Positions 10,284 to 38,716 of a DNA stretch of 42,791 nt are shown piece by piece (position 1 is the stretch's first letter; each line of letters begins with the position of its first letter). Location of the stretch: assembly GCF_001194135.2 (NCBI RefSeq), contig NC_068985.1, positions 36,643,239 through 36,686,029 of the forward strand, read 5' to 3'. Under the pieces are notes generated by a model that was not told where the DNA came from, searched no databases, and saw only the letters and a list, made by a program, of their open reading frames with translations. Position numbers and translations under genes: made by a program. Source of the stretch: Octopus bimaculoides (taxonomy: Eukaryota).

Positions 10284-11330
10284 ATGTCCAGTCATAGAGT
10301 GACCAATGGTTTCGCATCCATAAAGGGCCTAGCCCCATGGATGGCTCGTCAGACTCTAAAGCCGAAGACACACACTTACGATAGACTTTTAGACAATTGC
10401 ATAACACAGAAATGTAGACGCGCTTCCCCGGACACATACGACAACATTAAAAGTGAAGCCAAACAGATAGGAATTAGCCTACGTATAGAAGATAGGGTAG
10501 AAATTTTAGCCAAGAGAAATGCCTTCATCACAATCAAAGTCCACAAGCCGAACTTTGCCTCTAATCCCAAATGCCGCCTGATCAACCCAGCTAAATGCGA
10601 GATTGGCTAGGCGAGCAAACATACTGAGGAAGATCAACGACGACATAGGGAAGCTTCCGCCCTCTCCCTATAGCGCAGTACAAAAGAGATGACCTCGTGG
10701 TTTAACTCCAACCGGGGGAAGGGCAGAACAAGGTTCACACAGTTCGACATAATCGACTTTTACCCGTCTATATCGAAAGGGTTGCTGATCAAAGCACTTC
10801 CCTTCGCTAAGGGCTTCACGGACATTAGCAACAGGGATATAGACGTTATCATGCACACCAGGAGAACGGTGCAGTTCAATAAAGATTCGACGTGGGTCAA
10901 GCAATCCGACCCGAGGGTTCCTACGACAGCGCCGACGTTTGTGATCTCATCGGACCTAGACACCTTAAGTAAGAAGTTTCCTTTAGTCCTTTTCGGTCTC
11001 TACAGAGATGACGTTCTGACCACCTTTAGAGGAGCCAGCAGGCACACACTTGATAGGCTTAGAAAGGAATTGATCAGCGCCCTAGGCTCCATGGGACTCA
11101 GAGTTACTATCGCGACTAACCTCACCACCGTAGACTTTCTAGATGTTACTCTAAACTTGGGCTCCGGTTCACACAGGCCCTAGCGCAAGTCAAACGAGAG
11201 GCTGTCCTGCACCAATACAGCCTCCTTCCACCCTTTAACGTGTTCAAGAACCTAGTGAAGGGTGTCAGTAAGAGTATCCCGAATCTATCCTCAGGTCAAG
11301 AAATTTTCGACGCTGCAGTCCCCTACTCTG
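10284..11330 (+). mobile_element. Penelope-like element reverse transcriptase relic (possibly Naiad-type)
   Basis: AFITIKVHKPNF..NPKCRLINPAK.EIG; QFDIIDFYPSIS; GSYDSADVCDLIG (shifted frame); GLYRDD; VDFLDVTLNL; thumb motif HP.NVFKNL.KGVSK.I.NLSS..EIFD.A.PY. It has TAG stops and frameshifts. Confidence 0.88.
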
Positions 11331-14342: not shown

Positions 14343-15591
14343 TTGGTCATCCCATGAATAATGCATTTTTTAATACTTCTTTTATTTTTGAAAATTAAGT
14401 TCTTTTTAAATCTTCAGTTTCTACAATGCTCTTCCATCTATCTGGTAGACTTGCAAGGCTCCTCTTCCAAAATTCACTTGAAAGATACTCCTCCAGTACT
14501 GTTCTAACCTCGTCTACAGAATTCATATCTTTTCTGTCCAAATGATTTTGAAAACTGCGGAATAAATGATAATCAGATGGGGCAATGTCCGGCGAATATG
14601 TTGGATGAGGCATCATTTCTCATTCAAACTGCTCCAGCCTTTGGAATGTCATCCTCGTTATATGTAGCCGAGCATTATTCTGATGGAAGAACACTTTTCG
14701 TCTTGAAAGCAAAGATGGTCGTCTTTCTTCTTGCGCTGACTTAAGCCGCTCAAACTGTTCGCAGTAGATCTCCTTTGTTATCGTTTAGTTTGGGTTGAAA
14801 AGTTCAAAGCGGACTAAACCTTTCATATCTCACCAAACAGATAACAACACCTTACATGGGTGAAGACCTTCTTTAGCCTGGGATGCCGGTGTTTCTCTTT
14901 TCCTTACCCACTGTCTTCGGCGCTTGACATTTTTATAGAGAGCCCATTTCTCGTCACCAGTCACTATTTGGTCAAAAAAAAAAAAAAGAAAAGGTTCATT
15001 CGTGAGATGTGACTCTCTACGCGCGATTAGACTCGGAATGTTTGTGAGGAACTTATTGACCCAATTTCCCGACTTATCCGATGGCACGCAGGTGTCGATG
15101 AATGGTTGAATGACCAAATCCAAGCTTCTCTGTTAGTTCCTCAACAGTTGCAATGGGATTTTGTTCCATCAGGGTTTGCAGGACGTCCTCGTCGAGCCCT
15201 GCAGATCTTCCAGGACGAGGCTCGTCTTCTAGACTGTAGTTTCCAGCTCGAAATTTCTAGAGCCACCGTTGACCTTGGCTTACGCTCATTGTCTAATCTC
15301 CATATTGTATAAATATTCCTCGCACTTTCCGTTGCGTTGTTGCCTTTAGTGAACCCACAAAGCAAAATATGCCGAATATGCTCCTTTGTCACTTACATTA
15401 TAGCTTTGAAAAAATAACTGTTAAAATCGAACTGCACTCTTCAAAACTGACACCAAGAATAAGTGGATGGTAAAATTACTACCTGCTTTTATAGCAAGTT
15501 GAGCAAGTTGATGCCTGTAGTTTATCCTGTCCTCCTCCGACTTTTAGTTCATGCAATTGAAAAAAACCTCATTATTTATGGGATGACCCAA
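14342..15591 (-). mobile_element. Full-length (1250 bp) defective mariner transposon
   Basis: TIRs TTTGGTCATCCCATGAATAATG and CATTATTTATGGGATGACCCAA, with TA on both sides. ATG at 15398 is followed by TAA. Motifs TKEHIRHILL, IVTGDEKW, HQNNAR (second D lost) and PHPTYSPDIAPSDYHLFRS, with frameshifts. Confidence 0.95.
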
Positions 15592-17694: not shown

Positions 17695-18395
17695 CAGGTG
17701 TAAGTCGAAAATTATATGCACTCTTGTTTCTGTAATTTATTAAAACAAAAGCCGGGGTTGAACAATTACATCATTTTCGACAAAGTTTCGTAGCTCTTCG
17801 ATGCACTTCTTCCGGCGGTCCACAAGCTTGCTTATCCATCGGAGAAGAATGTTTTCGGCTGGTCGCGCAGCCATTCATACACCGCGTCCTGCATTTCTTC
17901 GTCCATAGCAAATCGATGGCCTCGTAACGGATGTTCCGAGCGGTTCAAAGAGGCGAAGTCTGGTCTGTACGCAGGGCATTCCAGTAGCCCGAAACCCAAT
18001 TTTTCAATGGTTTCAACGGTGTAGGTGGCTGTATGTTAGCGTGCAACCATAACACTTACTTTGACAATAGACTTTTACGTTAGGTGCGAATTGTTGGCTT
18101 CAGTTTGTTGGCCAGCATTTCACTATAAACTACACTGTTGACTGTAGATCCCCTTCCTTGGTAATGTTTCAGCATAGGCCCTTTGGCGCCCCTCAAATAG
18201 TAAGCATCACATTTTCTGTCAAAGGTTTGGTCTTGAATTTCTTTTTCGCTTGCGATTCAGAGTGTTTCCATTCCTTACACTGCTTTTTGAATTCTGGCTC
18301 AATGTGGTGGACACAATCTCTTCTCCTGTGACTATTCTCTCCATAAATACTTCACACTCATCATTGTAGCGGTCGAGTAAGCGTTGATAGATCTC
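17695..18395 (-). mobile_element. Mariner transposon relic, C-terminal half (irritans-like)
   Basis: Minus strand: QRLLDRYNDECEVFMERIVTG..CVHHIEPEFKKQCKEWKHSES..KKKFKTKP..VMLTI. A TIR-like end TA|CAGGTGTAAGTCGAAAATTAT lies at 17693. Confidence 0.82.
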
Positions 18396-18438
18396 TTGGT
18401 ACTCACCTCAGAAGGGAATATAAAGGCATGCATGTGTT

Positions 18439-18471
<33 letters not shown>

Positions 18472-18843
18472 TCATATATACATACAAAAATGCAAACGTA
18501 CAAAAATAAGTATAAACAGAAGGATGTGCATACCCCATGTGCATGAAATCGGGTGTGCGTAAGACTGGATGAACGCCTATACACATAAATAGGTGAGGCA
18601 TATAGATAGGCACCTATAAGGATACACACACGCACATATGCATACATATTTACGTACATACAAATACACACGCGCACACATATGACATTTCTTTTTTCTT
18701 TTCGTTTTCCGGTGTTTTCAACCTTGCACCTTTTACATCTACTTTCTTCTCGCCTTTTCTTATGGAGTAGATACGCAAAGAAGTGATTGAAAGACCAGTT
18801 CAGATATATTTGAGAGATATTTGAACTTATAAAAGGCTTTTCA

Positions 18844-19069
18844 TTGCAGTGGGGGAAAAGTTGTCGATTAAAACAAAAAAGTGTCAGAGCACCGTAGTCG
18901 GATCAGAGCGCTCTCTATTGGACTGGTGGATATGTATTGCGGACTCTTCAGTCTTCTTCAGCACCAGATACCAAAGAGACAACTCTGACATTACTGGGAC
19001 GAAAATTCCTTTTAAAAATAAATATATTAATAATATTAACTGATAGCGCATATTGGTCACTAGCTTGGA
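18844..19069 (-). mobile_element. 226-bp non-coding hammerhead-bearing insert A, flanked by a 40-bp diverged direct repeat
   Basis: Direct repeats at 18804-18843 and 19070-19109 (35/40 identical). Internal degenerate type I hammerhead at 18923-18967. Confidence 0.7.
18923..18967 (-). ncRNA. Degenerate type I hammerhead ribozyme motif (probably inactive)
   Basis: Minus strand: CTGGTG-CTGAAGA-AGAC-TGAAGA-GTCC-GCAA-TACATA-TC-CACCAG. Stem I is a perfect 6 bp. GAAA is mutated to GCAA and the first stem II pair is an A-C mismatch. Confidence 0.65.
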
Positions 19070-19217
19070 ATACATTTGTGAGATATTTGAACTCGTAAAA
19101 GTCTTTTCACAATTGTTTGCCATGGAAAAAAATATTTAAGGAAACTAGTTAAGATAATTAGAAATAACGAATTTCTAAATCTCTCAGAGAGACTTAAGCA
19201 GTAGTGATGCGATAAAG

Positions 19218-19507
19218 TAGTTGTATACTGCCAACTTAACGTGACAGTCCCAATAAGGGAATATACTACTGCTGTTTAGCCCTAGGAAGCCAGACCGCTT
19301 CCTATTAGGCCTTGACACACTTTCTGTGCCCTTATCCTTACGAAGGGGAGACAAACTCCTCCAGCCAGCCCAGCCTGCATTCAGGGACATGTTTCTGAGT
19401 CTTTGCTCGTCATCAGCCTGAAGTAGCATGACCGGCTAGCTGAAGAAATCTGTCTCAGCTTCGTAAGGATATACTATTTCAGTGAGATACTATCCACTGG
19501 TAACAAA
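19218..19507 (-). mobile_element. 290-bp non-coding hammerhead-bearing insert B (retrozyme-like), flanked by a perfect 62-bp direct repeat
   Basis: Identical 62-mers at 19156-19217 and 19508-19569. Internal type I hammerhead in a ~139-nt rod hairpin, plus smaller hairpins such as TAGGAAGC/GCTTCCTA. Confidence 0.82.
19380..19422 (-). ncRNA. Minimal type I hammerhead ribozyme motif
   Basis: Minus strand: TTCAGG-CTGATGA-CGAG-CAAAGA-CTCA-GAAA-CATG-TC-CCTGAA. All core nucleotides are present, stem I is 6 bp, stem III is the palindrome ACATGT, and the GUC cleavage triplet predicts a cut between 19386 and 19385. Confidence 0.82.
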
Positions 19508-22500
19508 AATTAGAAATAACGAATTTCTAAATCTCTCAGAGAGACTTAAGCAGTAGTGATGCGATAAAGGTTGTTTCTCATTTAATGCAGATGATTCAAT
19601 ATATATCTTTCTGTAATTGCAGATATTTGAATGTAATTGGTATATTCAGGAATTTAGGGACGATTAGAAATTATGGATTTATGAATTTATTTCCTTGCTG
19701 AAAAATTATTGAACGTTTTGAAACAACTTTCTGAATTCAACTTTGATTTGGTAAAAAATATATTCACTGTTGTGACAAATGGAACAAGTGTCATGGTTAC
19801 ATTTTGCCAGTATCAATTGTGTTATGTATATGAACTTCATTCAGTTGTTTGTGATGATTTCTTTACAGTAAAACCGTGTCAAAATCTGAAATTAGCTTAA
19901 TTATGTTTCTTGAAATGACGATAACGAGTACCTTTGAGGATAATGATTAAAATACAGATTCTACGGTTACGAATTTGGTTAAGAGTTACATCAATGTACA
20001 ACAAACTGAGCTTAGTGTAGACTTTGGCTGAAGGAAATTAAGGATTGACAATCTCATTAAAAACTGAAGACAATTGCCAGGTCATTTCGTAGGTTTCTAT
20101 TTTAAAAGAAGTGAAATACTTCAGAAATTTGTTAAAGAAGAGCATATTCATGAATTGTAATTAATTAATGATATTGTGCTGGAATGGTTCATCTGAAATG
20201 TTATTGTAATTTTTTGTTTCTTAAAAGATGTATTGAAAAAATTATGTTCGCTCGACTTTTCAAACAATAAATTTAACGCTGTTGGCACCGCGGTTGCATC
20301 GTCAAGGGAACTAATTAAAATTAAAGTTGAATAACTAAGTTGAAGAGCAACAACTTTGATCTCTGAAAAAGGCATATTTGTTTTCCTTTTAGAAAAAGTA
20401 ATTCGAGAAAATAATCCAATGTTCTTCTTGCTAAAAGAATGTGTCAAGAAAAATTCGAACAGCAAAGGAACAAAAATCTGATTGGATTCGTGAAGTATCG
20501 TTATTTGAAAAAAAAAAAAAAAATCCTTCTAACTTAGGATGTATTTGCTTCATTCTAATTTTGCCATCATAANNNNNNNNNNNNNNNNNNNNNNNNNNNN
20601 NNNNNNNNNNNNNNNNNNNNNNNNNNNNNNNNNNNNNNNNNNNNNNNNNNNNNNNNNNNNNNNNNNNNNNNNNNNNNNNNNAAAAAAAAAAAAAAAAATC
20701 CTTCTAACTTAGGATGTATTTGCTTCATTCTAATTTTGCCATCATAAGCTTGCCTGTAAAATATTTTCAAGCAAATATATGAAAGAATATGTATCCCTCT
20801 TTTAGAAAAAATTGCTTATTTCCCACATCGAAACTGAACCCATGATCTGAAGGATTTACTTTACAAAAAAGAAAAAAAAAAAGAAAAGAAAAGAAAAAAG
20901 AAAAGACCTCAGTACTGAGATTAACTCCAAGGTGAGTGCTGACTTTAATGCATACGTGAAACTTCTGACATAGCTGTTCTTTGCATAGACCATCTCTTGA
21001 AATATATGAATCAAATCATATCTTGTGCCAAAGGGGATGACTTCATTTTATAAACTTGTTTTAATTCTTGAACAATTAAGTGTTGCTCTTTATATCAAAA
21101 AGATATTAGTGCAAAAATTAGAATTCATATATTGAGGCATACATTTTATCGATGTTTTATAGAAACGAGACATACAGGCGAAACAACTCTTTTATTACTA
21201 ATTTTTCTACATGTGAAAAAGAGCGGGTGTTTAGGTTTTGTTTATGAATATCTTTATAATTAGCCACATAAGCAAAAGCATTTCAAACTTCTATACTGTT
21301 ATAAACTTTAGTGAGGGAACATCTGGAAAATGATACTTTTATTGGATCATTTAGAAATTAAATTATCAGCAAAATATAGCATCAGACATTGAGCCACTTC
21401 TTTATGGAGGGGTTGCAGTAATCTCTTTTGTGGTGGGCTTGCCATGCATTATACATTAACATTTGGCATGAATATCCACTCTTTTGATGATATTGGTCCA
21501 AAAGGGAGTGATCTAAGAAGAATACACGTATTATATGAGGTTCTGCAAAGATATTTAGGTTCCTCAGTGGTGGTAATAAGAAGCTGTTTCAGAAGATCTG
21601 GTGTATCAGCAACGACTGTTGCATCTAATGTCTCATTGGAACAGCTTATTTTTGATTACATGCCATTGAAACTTTCTTTCAGAAGTATTATAATGTCCAA
21701 GATCAAGGCTGAAAATACTCCATTTTTATTGCTCACGTATATATGACCAAGATCTCATCACTCGCTGCTTGTCACGATTTTGAGATTTCTGTCTTTCCTG
21801 GCACTGTTGCGAGTTCTTTGGTGTCTACGAGCAGTCTGTATGTTTCAAGTTGTATGTATGCAGCTAATCCTGTTGCACTCTGTTCAAGTTGTCTTTTTGT
21901 AGCCTCTCTAATTTCCTGTCTTTGTTAGTCTGAAATATTTTGTGAGCAGCATTTCTGGTATCTATTTCCGCTGCCTTTAGACTACAATTGCGTTCGTTAG
22001 CGGAGGATGTTATGAGCGTGGGACATTTTTATCGTGGTATTTTTGACGAAAAATCATCAGTATCCCACCCTACCCCACCCCAAACAGACAGTTATATGTT
22101 TAATAGAAATTACAGAAGTATGATTTTGAAGAGAGATGCAATTGCAAAGTGATGCAAATGATTTGCGAAATGAACGATGAGTATTTGATTTAAATGGCAG
22201 TAGATATGGAAACATAACCAAAGAGGTTAATTAGGAATTGGAAAGAAGCAACTGAAAGACAAAGAATGCAAGAATAGCGGATGCATGAAATTAACAGAAC
22301 ATGTAACATGTTTTATCAGTCAGTGTGTGTATGAATGATGCTTCGAAAAGAAACATCTCTATTTTAAAGCAGGCTGCATCTCTGATTCCAACTCTGACTC
22401 CCGACTTAGATTGTTGCCTGCTCAGGCATGTGCGTGTAAGAAAAGGGATATATCTTTCTTTTTACCCTTTTTCTAATGCGTGCTATTCTTTTGTTTTAGA

Positions 22501-26090: not shown

Positions 26091-26519
26091 CGTGTGTGTT
26101 GTAAACAAAAACATTGATCATGAATTCGCACATATACACATACGTACGCACACACACGTACATACTCAAATACATTTCACATGTACAATTAACTATTAAA
26201 GTTTTCACAAATCTTAACACCTTTTTTATTTTGCTTCATCGTTTTCTTTTGCAGATTTAATATATATAATAAAAAAAAAACGCACAACAAATACCAGAAC
26301 ATTTATTAGGAAATTTCCCCACAGGGAAATTAGTCGATAAATGACAGTGATGTTAGTGTGATGGTGGTAGAGGAATATTATTTTTCGCATAAAACCATCT
26401 CCTCTAATTAACTGTACTCGATAGATTGAGTGAATTGACACCTCTCATCCGCAGTAACTTCATACTTTTGCAAAACAAGAGCCATAACAAAAATAACAGC
26501 AACTCTGGTTCATTTGTTT

Positions 26520-27570
26520 ATTATTGTAAGCAAAATACCAAAGTTAAACATCTACGTATCAATGAATTACTGTTTGCAGACGATTGTATATTACTTGTGC
26601 CAGATGAGTTCAACATGCAAGTATGCAGGGATCAGTTCTCAAAGTCTTGCAGTAACTTTGGCCTTACTATCAGCACTACAAAAACAAGTACTGCATCAAT
26701 GTCACAGGGAATAAAAGTGGGAATGAGCTATAAAAAAGTAAAGGTTCTTCAAAATCTTGCACTGTCCTTAAATACCTGCATCGATGCTGAAGTATCATCA
26801 CCTATCGGTAAGTGCAAGGAATGTACTGGTTTTGGAAGACTGCAGCATAGATTGTGTGGCACCTAAGGCCGTCTTAGCAGTATTATAAATCCCTACCCAT
26901 CCTACCATGACTAACCTATACACTGGACCCAATAATTTTTATTTATTGACAATAAACCTCAGGATACACAGATCAGAATTGGGCCCCTAGACCTGTGAGA
27001 CCTCTTCTTCGGGCAAATCAGTGTACTGGGCCCTATACTATTTATTGATAGTAAACCACAACATACATAAATCCGAATTGGGCCTCTAGACCCATGAGGT
27101 CCCCGAAAAGAACCCAGTGTTCTCATGTTTTAAGACGGCTCTGGTGGCAACCGAATATATGCTGAGCTTCCAAAATCAAAATCTACAATTCTCTAATCTT
27201 ACCAGCTCCCCTCTCTGGTTCAGAAACTTGGACAGTGTACCAGTGCCATGTGAAAAGTTTAATTATTCTCACATATCCTGTAAAAGGAAGATTCTAAACA
27301 AAGTGGCTGGATTAAATTCTCAATTCAGAGATTCTCAGAAGGTTCTCAGTTTGTTTGTTAAGCTCAAGTTAATCCAGTTGTGTTTGGCTGGACATTCCAG
27401 AATGCTCGACTGTTACTGTCTATTCTGAGCTCGCAAAAAGGAGACACAATGTTGGTGGTACACCACATGAATATTCAAAGATGCACTGAAAGCAACCTGA
27501 AAAAACCGTAGGATAAACCCAAACTCACGGGAAGATCATGCTCGGGACAGGGCTGCACAGGAGTCGAGCA
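26520..27570 (+). mobile_element. RTE (BovB-like) LINE 3' relic, interrupted by a hAT MITE
   Basis: LRINELLFADDC..QFSKSCSNFGLTISTTKT..IDAEVSS..GFGRL. After the MITE: KIKIYNSLILP..SETWTVYQ; LAGH.RM; FKDALKA..INPNS.EDHARDRAA. Confidence 0.88.
26864..27143. mobile_element. Non-autonomous hAT MITE, 280 bp, with 8-bp TSD
   Basis: TIRs TAAGGCCGTCTTA and TAAGACGGCTCTG. TSD GTGGCACC / GTGGCAAC (7/8). Internal ~85-bp diverged tandem duplication. Confidence 0.88.
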
Positions 27571-31967: not shown

Positions 31968-32183
31968 AATCCTTTTTACTATTGGCTCAAAGCGTGAAAT
32001 TTTCGGCAAGGGGGCCAGTCGAATACATCAACCCGCATTGCCCAACGAGTACTTATTTTATCGACCCCGAAAGGATGAAAGGCAAAGCCGACCTCGGCGG
32101 AATTTCAACTCAGAACGTAAAGCCAGAAGAAATGCCGCTAAGCATTTTGTCCGGTGTGCTAACGATTCTGTCAGTTCACCGCC

Positions 32184-37584: not shown

Positions 37585-38110
37585 GACACAAGGACACAAC
37601 TCCCAGAGGAAGGCTGTAGTCAATTAAATTGATCCCAGTAATTAACTGGTACTAGTCTTCTTCACCCCAGAAGAATAAAATAAAAAACCCTCCAAAACGG
37701 GGATTTAAATTCAGAGCTAATCTGAAGAAATAAAATACCGAAACATATTTTAAGACGCCTTTATGGACCACTAAGACAACATCCGTACAGTCGCTCGACC
37801 TACTACAAATAGCAGCCAAATCTTCAAAAAAATAAAGCGGATGATCCCGCCTAGAATGTTTTTGATCATAAGTCTGCTCAAATGGAGCTGATTCAGGGCT
37901 ACACAGCAACTCAGATCACAGAATTTTAGGGAAGGGGTACTGTCAATTAAATCGACTCCAGCACTTGATTAGTAGTTATTTTCATTGATCCTTGCAGAAA
38001 AAAAGGTAATCCAAGCAGGATTAGATATGAATTCAGAATTTAAGAGGTTGTAACCAAATGTTGCTTGGAATTTTGATTGGCATTCAACCAATCGTTTCCG
38101 TCAGCGGTCC
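37585..38110. repeat. Cluster of old SINE fragments (S1 at ~37585-37760 and ~37925-38110, minus strand; S4 at ~37790-37910)
   Basis: Diverged matches to motifs seen in better-preserved copies in this window. Confidence 0.5.
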
Positions 38111-38494
38111 TCCTTTTTTTGATTTGCTGTTAAGACAGAGAAGAAAGGGCAACGCCATGACCCCTTAAATATTTTTAGGGTTTCCATGATTGAGAGGAAT
38201 CACTTATCAGTGATCTTGAAGCTGGTGACATTGTTCAAATGCTTGGAATCAGTTTTGTATAATTTTATTGTTCCGCATACATATTGTATTAACAAAGTGT
38301 TTTGTAGCTACTCACTTTCTTTGTCTCTCTTAAAAAAGAAAAAAAGAAAAGGACAAGGACCTTGCAGAATATAGTCTTAGATTTTTTATATATGAATTAA
38401 GACGCAACGGCCACAGCAGGAGTCTATTTTCTTTGATTACAAGTTAGGTCGATCAAGGCTGCTCTGGGAAATTCCCCATACCCTCAATCTTTAT

Positions 38495-38716
38495 CAAAAT
38501 ATTGGTTTCAAATTTTGGCACAAAGTCAGCAATTTCGAGGAAGGGGTTAAGTCGATTCCATGGACCACAGTGATCAACTGGTATTTATTTTATCGACCCC
38601 GAAAGGATGAAAAGCAAAGTAGACCTCGGCGGAATTCGAACTCAGAACGTAAAGACAGATGAAATGCTGCTAAGCATTTTGCCCGATGTATTAACGATCC
38701 TGCCAGCTCGTCGCCG
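38495..38716 (-). mobile_element. tRNA-derived SINE S1, near full length
   Basis: TTTATCGACCCCGAAAGGATGAAAAGCAAAGTAGACCTCGGCGGAATTCGAACTCAGAACGTAAAGAC..CTGCCAGCTCGTCGCC. Confidence 0.9.

What the first reader, a model, noticed from the sequence alone, without database searches (positions are those of the whole stretch)
19156..19569. Young 290-bp hammerhead-ribozyme element flanked by a perfect 62-bp target duplication
Seen: the 62-mer AATTAGAAATAACG...GTGATGCGATAAAG occurs identically at 19156-19217 and 19508-19569. It brackets a 290-bp insert with no recognisable coding similarity and a complete minimal type I hammerhead core on the minus strand (19380-19422) with palindromic stem III ACATGT. 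Established: minimal hammerheads with palindromic stem III occur in Penelope-like element pseudo-LTRs and in non-autonomous animal retrozymes. Typical TPRT duplications are about 5-20 bp. Inference: the repeat is duplicated target rather than an element LTR, because it appears collinear with the surrounding hAT relic. Zero mismatches suggest a recent, possibly polymorphic insertion of a retrozyme-like element by a widely staggered cut.
Basis: partly seen in the sequence, partly recalled or inferred. Interest (0 to 1): 0.88.

Follow-up and report, generated by a model that had tools for sequence, protein, structure and literature searches.

The report
Solo hammerhead retroelement with 62-bp duplication
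A 290-bp non-coding insert carrying one hammerhead-ribozyme motif sits inside a decayed hAT transposon and is flanked by a perfect 62-bp copy of the target, so it looks like a single copy of a known kind of animal ribozyme retroelement with an unusually long insertion duplication.

Summary
The 62-mer is identical at 19156-19217 and 19508-19569, and it brackets a 290-bp, GC-richer insert. The minus strand carries one type I hammerhead (19377-25). A descriptor finds only this hit, where 0.02 are expected by chance. It sits at the tip of a ~50-bp RNA hairpin whose 7 G·U pairs all lie on the ribozyme strand. It stays far below Rfam thresholds (HH9, 20 bits against 52). It has a C·A pair at the base of helix II and cannot form helix III as a monomer.

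A frameshift-aware alignment runs in frame from the right flank through one 62-mer into the left flank (p about 0.01). This favours duplicated target over element sequence, but only modestly.

Three things were not testable here: copy number, element ends and an empty allele. No public copy was reachable. The scaffold is a draft, and an unmerged 65-bp overlap lies 1 kb away.

Verdict: probably a solo copy of a non-LTR retrozyme or Penelope-derived element, inserted with a long staggered cut. It is a new member of a known kind, of moderate to low interest.

The parts
19156..19217 (.). Left copy of the perfect 62-bp direct repeat (inferred target-site duplication)
   Evidence: Identical to 19508-19569. 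GC is 32%, like the flanks. In the hAT frame it reads IIRNNEFLNLSERLKQ**CDK, collinear with the profile.
19218..19507 (-). 290-bp non-coding insert; the element RNA sense is the minus strand
   Evidence: GC is 46.6%. The minus strand folds at -128 kcal/mol (z = -8.8); the plus strand folds at -96 (z = -5.3). No protein homologue, no tRNA, and no other copy in the window.
19333..19471 (-). Long imperfect hairpin (about 50 bp) that extends helix I, with the ribozyme at its tip
   Evidence: Inverted repeat I1. The fold has 44 Watson-Crick pairs and 7 G·U pairs. All the G·U pairs are on the minus strand, and none would pair on the plus strand. It gives a generic long-hairpin Rfam hit of 38 bits.
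19377..19425 (-). Type I hammerhead motif: UAC bulge 19425-19423; helix I 19422-19417 with 19385-19380; C3-A9 19416-19410; helix II and loop 19409-19396; G12-A14 19395-19393; ACAUGU 19392-19387; C17 19386. The predicted cleavage lies between 19386 and 19385.
   Evidence: Sequence. Single descriptor hit, 0.021 expected. Hammerhead_HH9 at 20.1 bits, E = 0.0032 for the 76 nt searched, below the gathering score of 52. Helix III is impossible as a monomer because the loop would be 2 nt.
19508..19569 (.). Right copy of the perfect 62-bp direct repeat
19127..19155 (+). Left-flank tail of the hAT relic (KKYLRKLVK). It lies at the profile position predicted if one 62-mer is ancestral.
   Evidence: 5.5 bits at a fixed offset. 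p = 0.003 with fixed length and 0.01 with free length, against all genomic windows.
19570..20548 (+). Decayed BED-hAT transposase relic (with stops and frameshifts) that was interrupted by the insert
   Evidence: A 71-aa piece finds hAT proteins; P0006 contains zf-BED plus Dimer_Tnp_hAT. The family HMM hits 19603-20457 at 38.2 bits and 19697-19870 at 30.1 bits. The right-flank head GCFSFNADD scores 8.4 bits, p = 1.3e-4.

Best explanation
The 290-bp insert is one solo, unit-length or 5'-truncated copy of a non-coding retroelement that carries a canonical animal type I hammerhead. This is the class called non-LTR retrozymes, now thought to be non-autonomous derivatives of Penelope-like elements. 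Its RNA is the minus strand.

Inferred mechanism, none of it shown here:
1. A retroelement endonuclease nicked the top strand after ...GATAAAG (19217).
2. That 3'-OH primed reverse transcription from the RNA 3' end (...GUAUACAACUA).
3. The bottom strand was cut 62 bp upstream.
4. Fill-in of the stagger produced the two identical 62-mers.

The insertion landed in, and is far younger than, a dead BED-hAT transposon.

The ends of the insert do not coincide with the ribozyme cleavage site. The template was therefore an uncleaved, multimeric or circular RNA, not a cleaved linear monomer.

At this locus the ribozyme is probably inert. There is only one copy, and its helix III (ACAUGU) can form only between two copies. 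Any cleavage would need a second RNA in trans.
For: Hammerhead:
- It is the only descriptor hit in 42.8 kb on both strands, with 0.021 expected.
- The alignment to Hammerhead_HH9 puts the UAC bulge, 6-bp helix I, CUGAUGA, 4-position helix II with CAAAGA loop, GAAA and GUC all in register.
- A mismatch at the base of helix II has a precedent in active axolotl retrozyme ribozymes (U·U in HHR_Amex2, PMC7229834).

RNA element on the minus strand:
- The minus strand folds at -128 kcal/mol against -96 for the plus strand, with z = -8.8 against -5.3.
- There are 7 G·U pairs and no A·C in the 51-pair hairpin.

The 62-mer is target sequence:
- The hAT relic is verified.
- On left flank + one 62-mer + right flank, the profile alignment runs ungapped and in frame across both junctions.
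- The right flank matches from its first codon (p = 1.3e-4).
- The left-flank tail matches at the offset predicted by one 62-mer (p = 0.003 to 0.01).
- Extension past the 62-mer has p = 0.01.
- Joining the left flank directly to the right flank gives no signal (best of three frames p = 0.09).
- The GC content of the 62-mer equals that of the flanks.

Known biology:
- Penelope-like elements make target duplications of variable length, because the second-strand cut is variable (PMC8557442).
- Metazoan retrozyme duplications, when present, are 'larger than 4 bp' (PMC7229834).
- Solo monomers are common and dispersed (bioRxiv 10.64898/2026.07.22.740005).
Against: - No hammerhead model reaches its Rfam gathering score. 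Scaled to the whole window, the HH9 E-value would be about 1.8.
- The 62-mer itself scores only -1.5 bits against the profile (p = 0.07), and it contains two stop codons. The case for collinearity therefore rests mainly on 9 codons of the left flank, in a lysine- and glutamate-rich, low-information part of the profile.
- No second copy of the insert could be found in the window or in any reachable collection. Its repetitive nature and true ends are therefore unproven.
- 62 bp is far longer than usual duplications from target-primed reverse transcription.
- The scaffold is a draft with 11 gaps and a proven false duplication 1 kb away.
- There is no tail, poly(A) or other 3' signature.
Confidence: 0.6

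Rival explanations
1. The 62-mer belongs to the element. On this reading the unit is 352 nt, and the locus is a 1.18-unit copy made by more-than-one-round reverse transcription of a circular or multimeric retrozyme RNA, or it is a collapsed tandem array. The true empty site would then be the left flank joined directly to the right flank.
For: - Animal retrozymes are defined by tandem units of 170-400 nt and are proposed to integrate as more-than-unit cDNAs (PMC7229834). A 352-nt unit with 44% GC fits that range.
- In a 352-nt circle, 9 nt of the 62-mer pair with the insert.
- The ends of the insert have GC content as low as the 62-mer, so composition does not discriminate.
Against: - The hAT profile alignment needs about 21 codons between the left-flank tail and the right-flank head, and the 62-mer supplies exactly that, in frame. 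The direct left-to-right join gives no signal.
- The folding gain from adding the 62-mer (-18.4 kcal/mol) lies within the range given by neighbouring 62-mers (-2.4 to -19.7).
- A 9-bp complement of this kind is expected by chance about 6% of the time (my estimate).
- The 62-mer folds equally well on both strands (-11.0 and -10.0), unlike the insert.
Confidence: 0.12
2. It is an assembly artefact. The duplication, or the copy number between the repeats, would be wrong because of haplotype bubbles, gap closing or collapse in a short-read draft. The real duplication could be shorter, or the insert could be present on one haplotype only.
For: - There are 11 N-gaps in 42.8 kb.
- The gap at 20573-20681 is flanked by a perfect 65-bp duplicate (20508-20572 = 20683-20747), which is an unmerged contig overlap of nearly the same length, only 1 kb away.
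- These two are the only long exact non-microsatellite repeats in the window.
Against: - There are no Ns between the two 62-mers.
- The intervening 290 bp is foreign, structured sequence.
- Both junctions (62-mer to insert, and insert to 62-mer) must exist in reads for an assembler to write them. A simple overlap artefact gives adjacent duplicates around a gap, not an insert (inference).
- The 65-bp case is explained by a poly-A length difference of 16 against 17.
Confidence: 0.12
3. It is a real insertion with a real target duplication, but not made by a retroelement endonuclease. Instead a cDNA or DNA fragment of the hammerhead element would have been captured during repair of a staggered or resected break, or by replication template switching, which also duplicates flanking target.
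For: - The duplication is unusually long.
- There is no 3' tail or poly(A).
- There is a 5-nt GTTGT microhomology, offset by TA, at the left junction.
Against: Nothing here separates this from target-primed insertion. Penelope-type elements are already known for variable duplications and for lacking poly(A) (PMC8557442, PMC11167929).
Confidence: 0.1
4. The hammerhead-like motif is a coincidence inside an unrelated hairpin-forming repeat (a SINE, MITE or miRNA-like hairpin) and has no ribozyme ancestry.
For: - The Rfam score is sub-threshold.
- There is a C·A pair at 10.1/11.1.
- Helix II has only 3 Watson-Crick pairs.
- The best Rfam hit over the wider region is a generic miRNA hairpin.
Against: - The descriptor expects 0.021 hits per window, and 0.003 with a palindromic helix III.
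- The UAC bulge and CAAAGA loop, which the descriptor did not require, also align to the HH9 consensus.
- The strand of the G·U bias is the ribozyme strand.
- There are no terminal inverted repeats and no tRNA-like part.
Confidence: 0.05

Closest known systems
Metazoan non-LTR retrozymes (Cervera & de la Pena 2020, PMC7229834), especially the amphibian type with a short palindromic helix III (newt satellite 2, axolotl HHR_Amex1 and HHR_Amex2)
   Same: - Canonical type I hammerhead with a 6-bp helix I, a 4-position helix II, a CAAA-type loop 2 and a UAC bulge.
- Helix III too short to act alone, with a palindromic sequence that allows a double hammerhead.
- A mismatch at the base of helix II, as in HHR_Amex2.
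- Non-coding, about 300 nt, GC below 50%, and a highly self-paired RNA.
- Solo monomers occur dispersed in genomes.
   Different: - The locus has one ribozyme and no tandem repeat, which is the defining arrangement.
- The closing pair is C·A rather than U·U or G-C.
- Expression and circular RNA are unknown.
- The host lineage could not be confirmed here. The held literature reports no cephalopod retrozyme.
Penelope-like element pseudo-LTR hammerheads and truncated Penelope-like copies (Cervera & de la Pena 2014, PMC4209133; Craig et al. 2021, PMC8557442)
   Same: - Single dispersed hammerheads that need dimers.
- 5'-truncated insertions without poly(A).
- Target duplications of variable length.
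- Preference for AT-rich targets (PMC11167929).
   Different: - The Penelope 'minimal' motifs have a long helix II (6-8 bp), a short helix I and no loop-loop motif. This one has the canonical architecture.
- There is no reverse transcriptase or GIY-YIG coding sequence in or next to the insert.
- The 30-40-bp 'tail' could not be assessed.
Retroelements with exceptionally long target duplications (for example rotifer R9, cited in PMC8557442)
   Same: Duplication of tens of base pairs, caused by widely spaced first- and second-strand cuts.
   Different: R9 is a site-specific rDNA LINE. Here the site is a dead transposon, and the responsible enzyme is unknown.
Schistosoma Sm-alpha / Sj-alpha SINE-like hammerhead elements (reviewed in PMC6765202)
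   Same: Short non-coding invertebrate retroposons (about 300 nt) carrying a canonical type I hammerhead with the CAAAUA-type loop 2.
   Different: Those elements have a Pol III promoter and a helix III that is stable in the monomer. No A-box or B-box was recognised by eye here (not formally searched), and helix III cannot form in cis.

Membership tests
Hammerhead ribozyme, type I (Rfam clan CL00010) | Conserved core nucleotides: C3 U4 G5 A6 N7 G8 A9, G12 A13 A14, A15.1-U16.1, and H17 that is not G | tested here: met
   CUGAUGA at 19416-19410, GAA at 19395-19393, A15.1 at 19392, U16.1 at 19387, C17 at 19386.
Hammerhead ribozyme, type I (Rfam clan CL00010) | Three helices around the core, with helix I open | tested here: inconclusive
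   Helix I has 6 perfect pairs and continues into a ~50-bp stem. Helix II has 3 Watson-Crick pairs plus C·A at 10.1/11.1. Helix III cannot form in one molecule and forms only as a 6-bp intermolecular ACAUGU duplex.
Hammerhead ribozyme, type I (Rfam clan CL00010) | Reaches the curated Rfam gathering score of a hammerhead model | tested here: not met
   No hit at gathering score. No hammerhead hit at E<=10 in 901 nt. HH9 scores 20.1 bits against 52 when only 76 nt are searched.
Hammerhead ribozyme, type I (Rfam clan CL00010) | Self-cleavage 3' of H17 | not testable with these tools
   Needs in vitro transcription of monomer and dimer constructs.
Metazoan non-LTR retrozyme | Head-to-tail tandem units of 170-400 bp, each with a type I hammerhead | tested here: not met
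   One hammerhead in the window. No tandem array at the locus. The only repeat is the 62-mer (1.18 units at most).
Metazoan non-LTR retrozyme | Non-coding, low GC (below 45-50%), RNA highly self-paired | tested here: met
   GC 46.6%. z = -8.8. No protein homologue or Pfam hit for the 81-aa ORF.
Metazoan non-LTR retrozyme | Multicopy family, expressed as linear and circular RNA | not testable with these tools
   No eukaryotic genome or transcriptome search is available. Pattern scans of the metagenome, viral and prokaryote collections found nothing.
Penelope-like element (pseudo-LTR or truncated copy) | Minimal hammerhead with a 6-8-bp helix II, one extra nucleotide between A9 and G10.1, and a conserved G10.1-C11.1 pair | tested here: not met
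   Helix II has 4 positions. If the C after A9 is read as the extra nucleotide, an unmatched A remains before G12 (features from PMC4209133).
Penelope-like element (pseudo-LTR or truncated copy) | Adjacent reverse transcriptase / GIY-YIG ORF, or sequence identity to a Penelope-like pseudo-LTR | tested here: not met
   The insert is 290 bp with no protein homologue. No pseudo-LTR library is available for comparison.
Target-site duplication of a retroelement insertion | Identical direct repeats that immediately abut the insert | tested here: met
   62/62 identical.
Target-site duplication of a retroelement insertion | The repeat is pre-existing target sequence, present once in the empty site | tested here: inconclusive
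   The reconstructed empty site is collinear and in frame with the hAT profile across both junctions (p about 0.01-0.03), and the rival join gives no signal. No real empty allele was seen.
Target-site duplication of a retroelement insertion | Other copies of the element have different flanking repeats | not testable with these tools
   No other copy was reachable.
hAT superfamily transposon (the interrupted host element) | Homology to BED-zinc-finger hAT transposases across the catalytic and insertion-domain region | tested here: met
   Exhaustive phmmer finds 7 hits at E<=1e-3. P0006 has zf-BED and Dimer_Tnp_hAT. The family HMM scores 38.2 and 30.1 bits over 19603-20457. Pfam alone did not detect it.

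The most novel reading that the evidence does not exclude
This could be a clean, young integration footprint of an animal retrozyme in a lineage where none has been described. The insert is circularly permuted relative to the ribozyme cleavage site and is bounded by a 62-bp stagger. If many copies of the family show similarly long, variable duplications and permuted ends, that would be direct genomic evidence for two things: that retrozymes integrate from circular or multimeric RNA, and that they use an endonuclease with very widely spaced nicks. A second nearby pair of 40-nt repeats, at 18804-18843 and 19070-19109, hints that long duplications may recur here.
Probability: 0.15. Interest if true: 0.55.

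Novelty: new member of a known kind. Interest (0 to 1): 0.3.

Why it matters
How animal retrozymes get back into DNA is inferred, not observed. A recent insertion into a recognisable dead transposon gives an internal 'before' sequence. From it one can read off the size of the stagger (62 bp), the priming junction, and the fact that the copied RNA was not a ribozyme-cleaved linear monomer. A single locus in a draft assembly is only an anecdote. Its value is as a seed for a genome-wide census of the family. Otherwise it is an ordinary dispersed hammerhead repeat of the sort found by the thousand in invertebrate genomes.

Tried and rejected
**Finding other copies of the insert**
- The 81-aa ORF across the insert was used as a handle. 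It is not on record and has no homologue.
- Ten window ORFs were tried to fetch the same locus from other assemblies. None is in the collection.
- Exact and gapped hammerhead patterns were scanned in the metagenome (twice), viral and prokaryote-genome collections. There were no matches.
- A full-text search for the core sequence found nothing.

**Checking the hAT relic**
- Pfam on six-frame translations of the reconstructed empty site found nothing.
- A word-indexed search with a stitched 263-aa conceptual peptide also found nothing. The relic was detected only by the exhaustive search.
- Contigs that encode the closest hAT relatives (L001, L002) do not extend into the region homologous to the 62-mer.

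**Other tests that led nowhere**
- RNA folding of a 352-nt circle, to decide whether the 62-mer belongs to the RNA, was not discriminating.
- Composition of the 62-mer was not discriminating either, because the ends of the insert are equally AT-rich.
- There is no tRNA-derived SINE head and no terminal inverted repeats.
- The 226-bp segment between the 40-nt repeats has no special fold.
- Three papers with duplication lengths or dimer-hammerhead details for Penelope-like elements (PMC522041, PMC19282, PMC5785218) are not held.
Full report
**1. The observation**

The 62-mer AATTAGAAATAACGAATTTCTAAATCTCTCAGAGAGACTTAAGCAGTAGTGATGCGATAAAG occurs identically at 19156-19217 and 19508-19569.
- The repeat ends sharply. 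Of the 12 bases to its left, 7 match. To its right nothing matches without gaps.
- With a 2-nt gap, blastn adds five bases: X-TA-GTTGT on the left against X-GTTGT on the right.
- The 290 bp between the copies (19218-19507) have 46.6% GC, against 32.3% for the 62-mer and 32.5% for the window.
- The insert has no second copy in the window.
- Apart from microsatellites, the window holds only two exact repeats of 40 nt or more: this one and a 65-mer discussed in section 5.

**2. The hammerhead**

On the minus strand the sequence reads UAC UUCAGG CUGAUGA C GAG CAAAGA CUC A GAAA CAUG UC CCUGAA (19425-19380).

*Evidence for a real hammerhead*
- I wrote a type I descriptor with these requirements: CUGANGA; helix II of at least 3 bp, with up to one unpaired base on each side; GAAA; 0-12 nt; U then H; helix I of at least 5 bp.
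- It finds exactly this site and nothing else on either strand. First-order Markov randomisations of the window give 0.021 hits per window, and 0.003 with a palindromic helix III.

*Rfam results*
- Rfam does not call it. There is nothing at gathering thresholds over the window, and no hammerhead hit at E<=10 over 901 nt.
- When only 76 nt are searched, Hammerhead_HH9 (RF02275) matches 19377-19425 on the minus strand. The score is 20.1 bits against a gathering score of 52, with E = 0.0032 for that small search space. Scaled to the whole window, the E-value would be about 1.8.
- The alignment is nevertheless informative. It puts the UAC bulge, the 6-bp helix I, CUGAUGA, a 4-position helix II closing a CAAA(G)A loop, GAAA and GUC all in register. 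It flags a single non-standard pair, C·A at 10.1/11.1, and a truncated helix III.

*Which kind of hammerhead*
- This is the canonical metazoan type I architecture described in PMC4209133. It is not the Penelope 'minimal' variant, which has a 6-8-bp helix II.
- A mismatch at the base of helix II has a natural precedent in the axolotl retrozyme ribozyme HHR_Amex2 (U·U), which cleaves efficiently as a dimer (PMC7229834).
- Helix III here would be 2 bp closed by a 2-nt loop. That is sterically impossible in one molecule. ACAUGU is self-complementary, so two copies could form a 6-bp intermolecular helix III. This is the classical double hammerhead of newt and Penelope-type motifs (PMC4209133).

**3. 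The element is an RNA of minus polarity**
- The minus strand of the insert folds at -128 kcal/mol (z = -8.8 against 200 dinucleotide shuffles). The plus strand folds at -96 (z = -5.3).
- The ribozyme sits at the tip of a hairpin of about 50 bp (19333-19471) that prolongs helix I.
- In this hairpin 44 pairs are Watson-Crick and 7 are G·U on the minus strand. No mismatch would be a G·U on the plus strand.
- If transitions fell on the two arms at random, seven out of seven has a probability of about 0.8% (my calculation).
- There is no tRNA-like part and there are no terminal inverted repeats.
- An 81-aa ORF (19429-19184) starts just upstream of helix I. It has no homologue or domain.

**4. Is the 62-mer target or element?**

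*The relic is real*
- Pfam on six-frame translations did not show it, and neither did a word-indexed protein search.
- The exhaustive HMMER search with a stop-free 71-aa stretch (19685-19897) found 7 proteins at E<=1e-3.
- Among them is P0006, which has a BED zinc finger and the hAT dimerisation domain.
- I built a profile from 21 relatives. It matches the window at 19603-20457 (38.2 bits) and at 19697-19870 (30.1 bits), with stops and frameshifts. This is a dead BED-hAT transposase on the plus strand.

*Collinearity test*
- I aligned the profile to DNA with a frameshift-tolerant dynamic programme.
- On the reconstructed empty site (left flank + one 62-mer + right flank) the alignment continues upstream from the strong region. 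It passes through the first codons of the right flank (GCFSFNADD against rfSlslDE) and through the 62-mer (IIRNNEFLNLSERLKQ**CDK). It then runs 9 codons into the left flank (KKYLRKLVK against ektvkklvl). It is ungapped and in one frame throughout.
- Frame and offset are fixed by the right flank. The upstream pieces can therefore be scored with no free parameter against every same-length stretch of the window on both strands:

| Piece | Score | p against the genomic null |
|---|---|---|
| Right-flank head | 8.4 bits | 1.3e-4 |
| 62-mer | -1.5 bits (null mean -9.1) | 0.07 |
| Left-flank tail | 5.5 bits | 0.003 |
| 62-mer plus left-flank tail | 4.0 bits | 0.003 |

- With the extension length left free, the p-values are 0.03 for any extension, 0.01 for extension beyond the 62-mer, and 0.01 for the left-flank tail.
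- If the 62-mer is removed and the left flank is joined directly to the right flank, the best of three frames gives p = 0.09.

*Conclusion on this point*
- The ancestral sequence most likely contained the 62-mer once, so the repeat is duplicated target.
- The support is real but modest. That part of the profile is rich in lysine and glutamate and carries little information.
- Composition and RNA folding do not help. The ends of the insert are as AT-rich as the 62-mer. The folding gain from adding the 62-mer to a circle is no better than with neighbouring 62-mers.

**5. The assembly caveat**
- The window is a draft scaffold with 11 runs of N.
- The gap at 20573-20681 is flanked by a perfect 65-bp duplicate (20508-20572 = 20683-20747). 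The two copies differ only in a poly-A of 16 against 17, which marks an unmerged contig overlap.
- False duplications of about this length therefore exist 1 kb from the finding.
- The hammerhead locus differs in three ways. It has no Ns, there are 290 bp of foreign structured sequence between the copies, and both junctions must be supported by reads to be written at all (inference).
- I regard a wholly artefactual duplication as unlikely. I cannot exclude a collapsed copy number or a haplotype-specific structure.

**6. Mechanism**

*Best supported reading*
- The insert is a solo copy of a non-coding, hammerhead-bearing retroelement of the non-LTR retrozyme or Penelope-derived class.
- It inserted in antisense into a dead hAT transposon.

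*Inferred steps*
1. The top strand was nicked after 19217.
2. cDNA synthesis was primed from the RNA 3' end.
3. The bottom strand was nicked 62 bp upstream.
4. Fill-in produced the duplication.

*Fit with known biology*
- Penelope-like elements are known for variable spacing between the two cuts, and hence for variable duplications (PMC8557442).
- They prefer AT-rich targets and lack poly(A) (PMC11167929).
- Retrozyme duplications are described only as 'larger than 4 bp' (PMC7229834).
- Retrozymes are now argued to derive from Penelope-like pseudo-LTRs, and dispersed solo monomers are common (bioRxiv 10.64898/2026.07.22.740005).

*Further points*
- The predicted cleavage site (between 19386 and 19385) is internal to the insert. 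The template was therefore not a ribozyme-cleaved linear monomer. It was uncleaved, multimeric or circular.
- This locus has one ribozyme that cannot fold alone, so it should not release a circular RNA by itself.
- On age: zero differences in 62 bp only bounds pairwise divergence below about 5% at the 95% level (my calculation). 'Young' is relative to the heavily decayed hAT relic. Polymorphism is untested.

**7. Comparison and novelty**
- The closest known things are amphibian-type retrozyme ribozymes and dispersed hammerhead repeats related to Penelope-like elements.
- The locus fails the defining tandem arrangement of retrozymes and the Rfam thresholds. I therefore file it as 'works like', and probably descends from, that class, rather than as a demonstrated member.
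- I found no report of cephalopod retrozymes in the held literature, and I could not confirm the host lineage.
- The unusual feature is the length of the duplication. Long duplications are known for other retroelements, for example R9 (cited in PMC8557442).
- This is a new member of a known kind.

**8. What could not be done**
- No eukaryotic genome or read set is reachable with these tools.
- Four pattern scans and several protein-handle look-ups found nothing.
- Copy number, element ends, flanking repeats of other copies, an empty allele, expression and cleavage all remain open. They are listed as next steps.

Noticed in passing
window 20508-20747: The assembly gap of 109 N (20573-20681) is flanked by a perfect 65-bp duplicate (20508-20572 = 20683-20747). 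The copies differ only in a poly-A of 16 against 17. This is an unmerged contig overlap, that is, a false duplication in the scaffold.
   Followed up: yes
window 18804-19109: A 40-nt direct repeat (18804-18843 / 19070-19109; 87.5% identity; blastn E = 5e-8) brackets 226 bp with no special RNA fold. It may be an older insertion with a long target duplication in the same hAT relic, or a local duplication.
   Followed up: partly
window 19570-20548 (and possibly 18365-18436): A decayed BED-zinc-finger hAT transposase relic lies on the plus strand. Pfam does not detect it, but exhaustive HMMER and a family profile do. A possible BED-finger remnant (CSGRVSVDRSLGTHLRREYKGMH) lies upstream; its significance was not assessed.
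   Followed up: partly
window 14830-15392 and 17832-17999, minus strand: Mariner/Mos1-type transposase relic. HTH_48 matches 15141-15392 and the partial DDE domain Transposase_1 matches 14830-15123. A C-terminal-looking fragment near 17832-17999 has no Pfam hit.
   Followed up: partly
window 10284-11183 and 26426-26866, plus strand: Reverse-transcriptase relics. 26426-26866 matches RVT_1 at E = 6.6e-5. 10689-11183 (FDIIDFYPSI...YRDD) matches RVT_1 only at E = 0.079, and its clade is unknown. Either could mark a retroelement family able to mobilise non-autonomous elements.
   Followed up: partly
window 19217-19224 vs 19569-19574: At the left junction the insert begins TA-GTTGT-ATAC, while the displaced target after the right 62-mer begins GTTGT-TTCTC. 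This is a 5-nt identity offset by TA. It could be microhomology at the inferred priming site, or chance.
   Followed up: no
window 19184-19429, minus strand: An 81-aa ORF starts 5 nt upstream of hammerhead helix I, runs through the rest of the insert and ends inside the left 62-mer. It has no homologue or domain. In some Penelope-like elements the ORF also starts at the ribozyme, so the position may not be accidental.
   Followed up: partly
window 37619-38612 and 32053-32080: Several diverged copies of a SINE-like repeat (GTCAATTAAATTGATCCCAGTAATTAACTGGTAC...; the 28-mer TTATTTTATCGACCCCGAAAGGATGAAA occurs twice exactly). Many gaps in the scaffold abut microsatellites.
   Followed up: no
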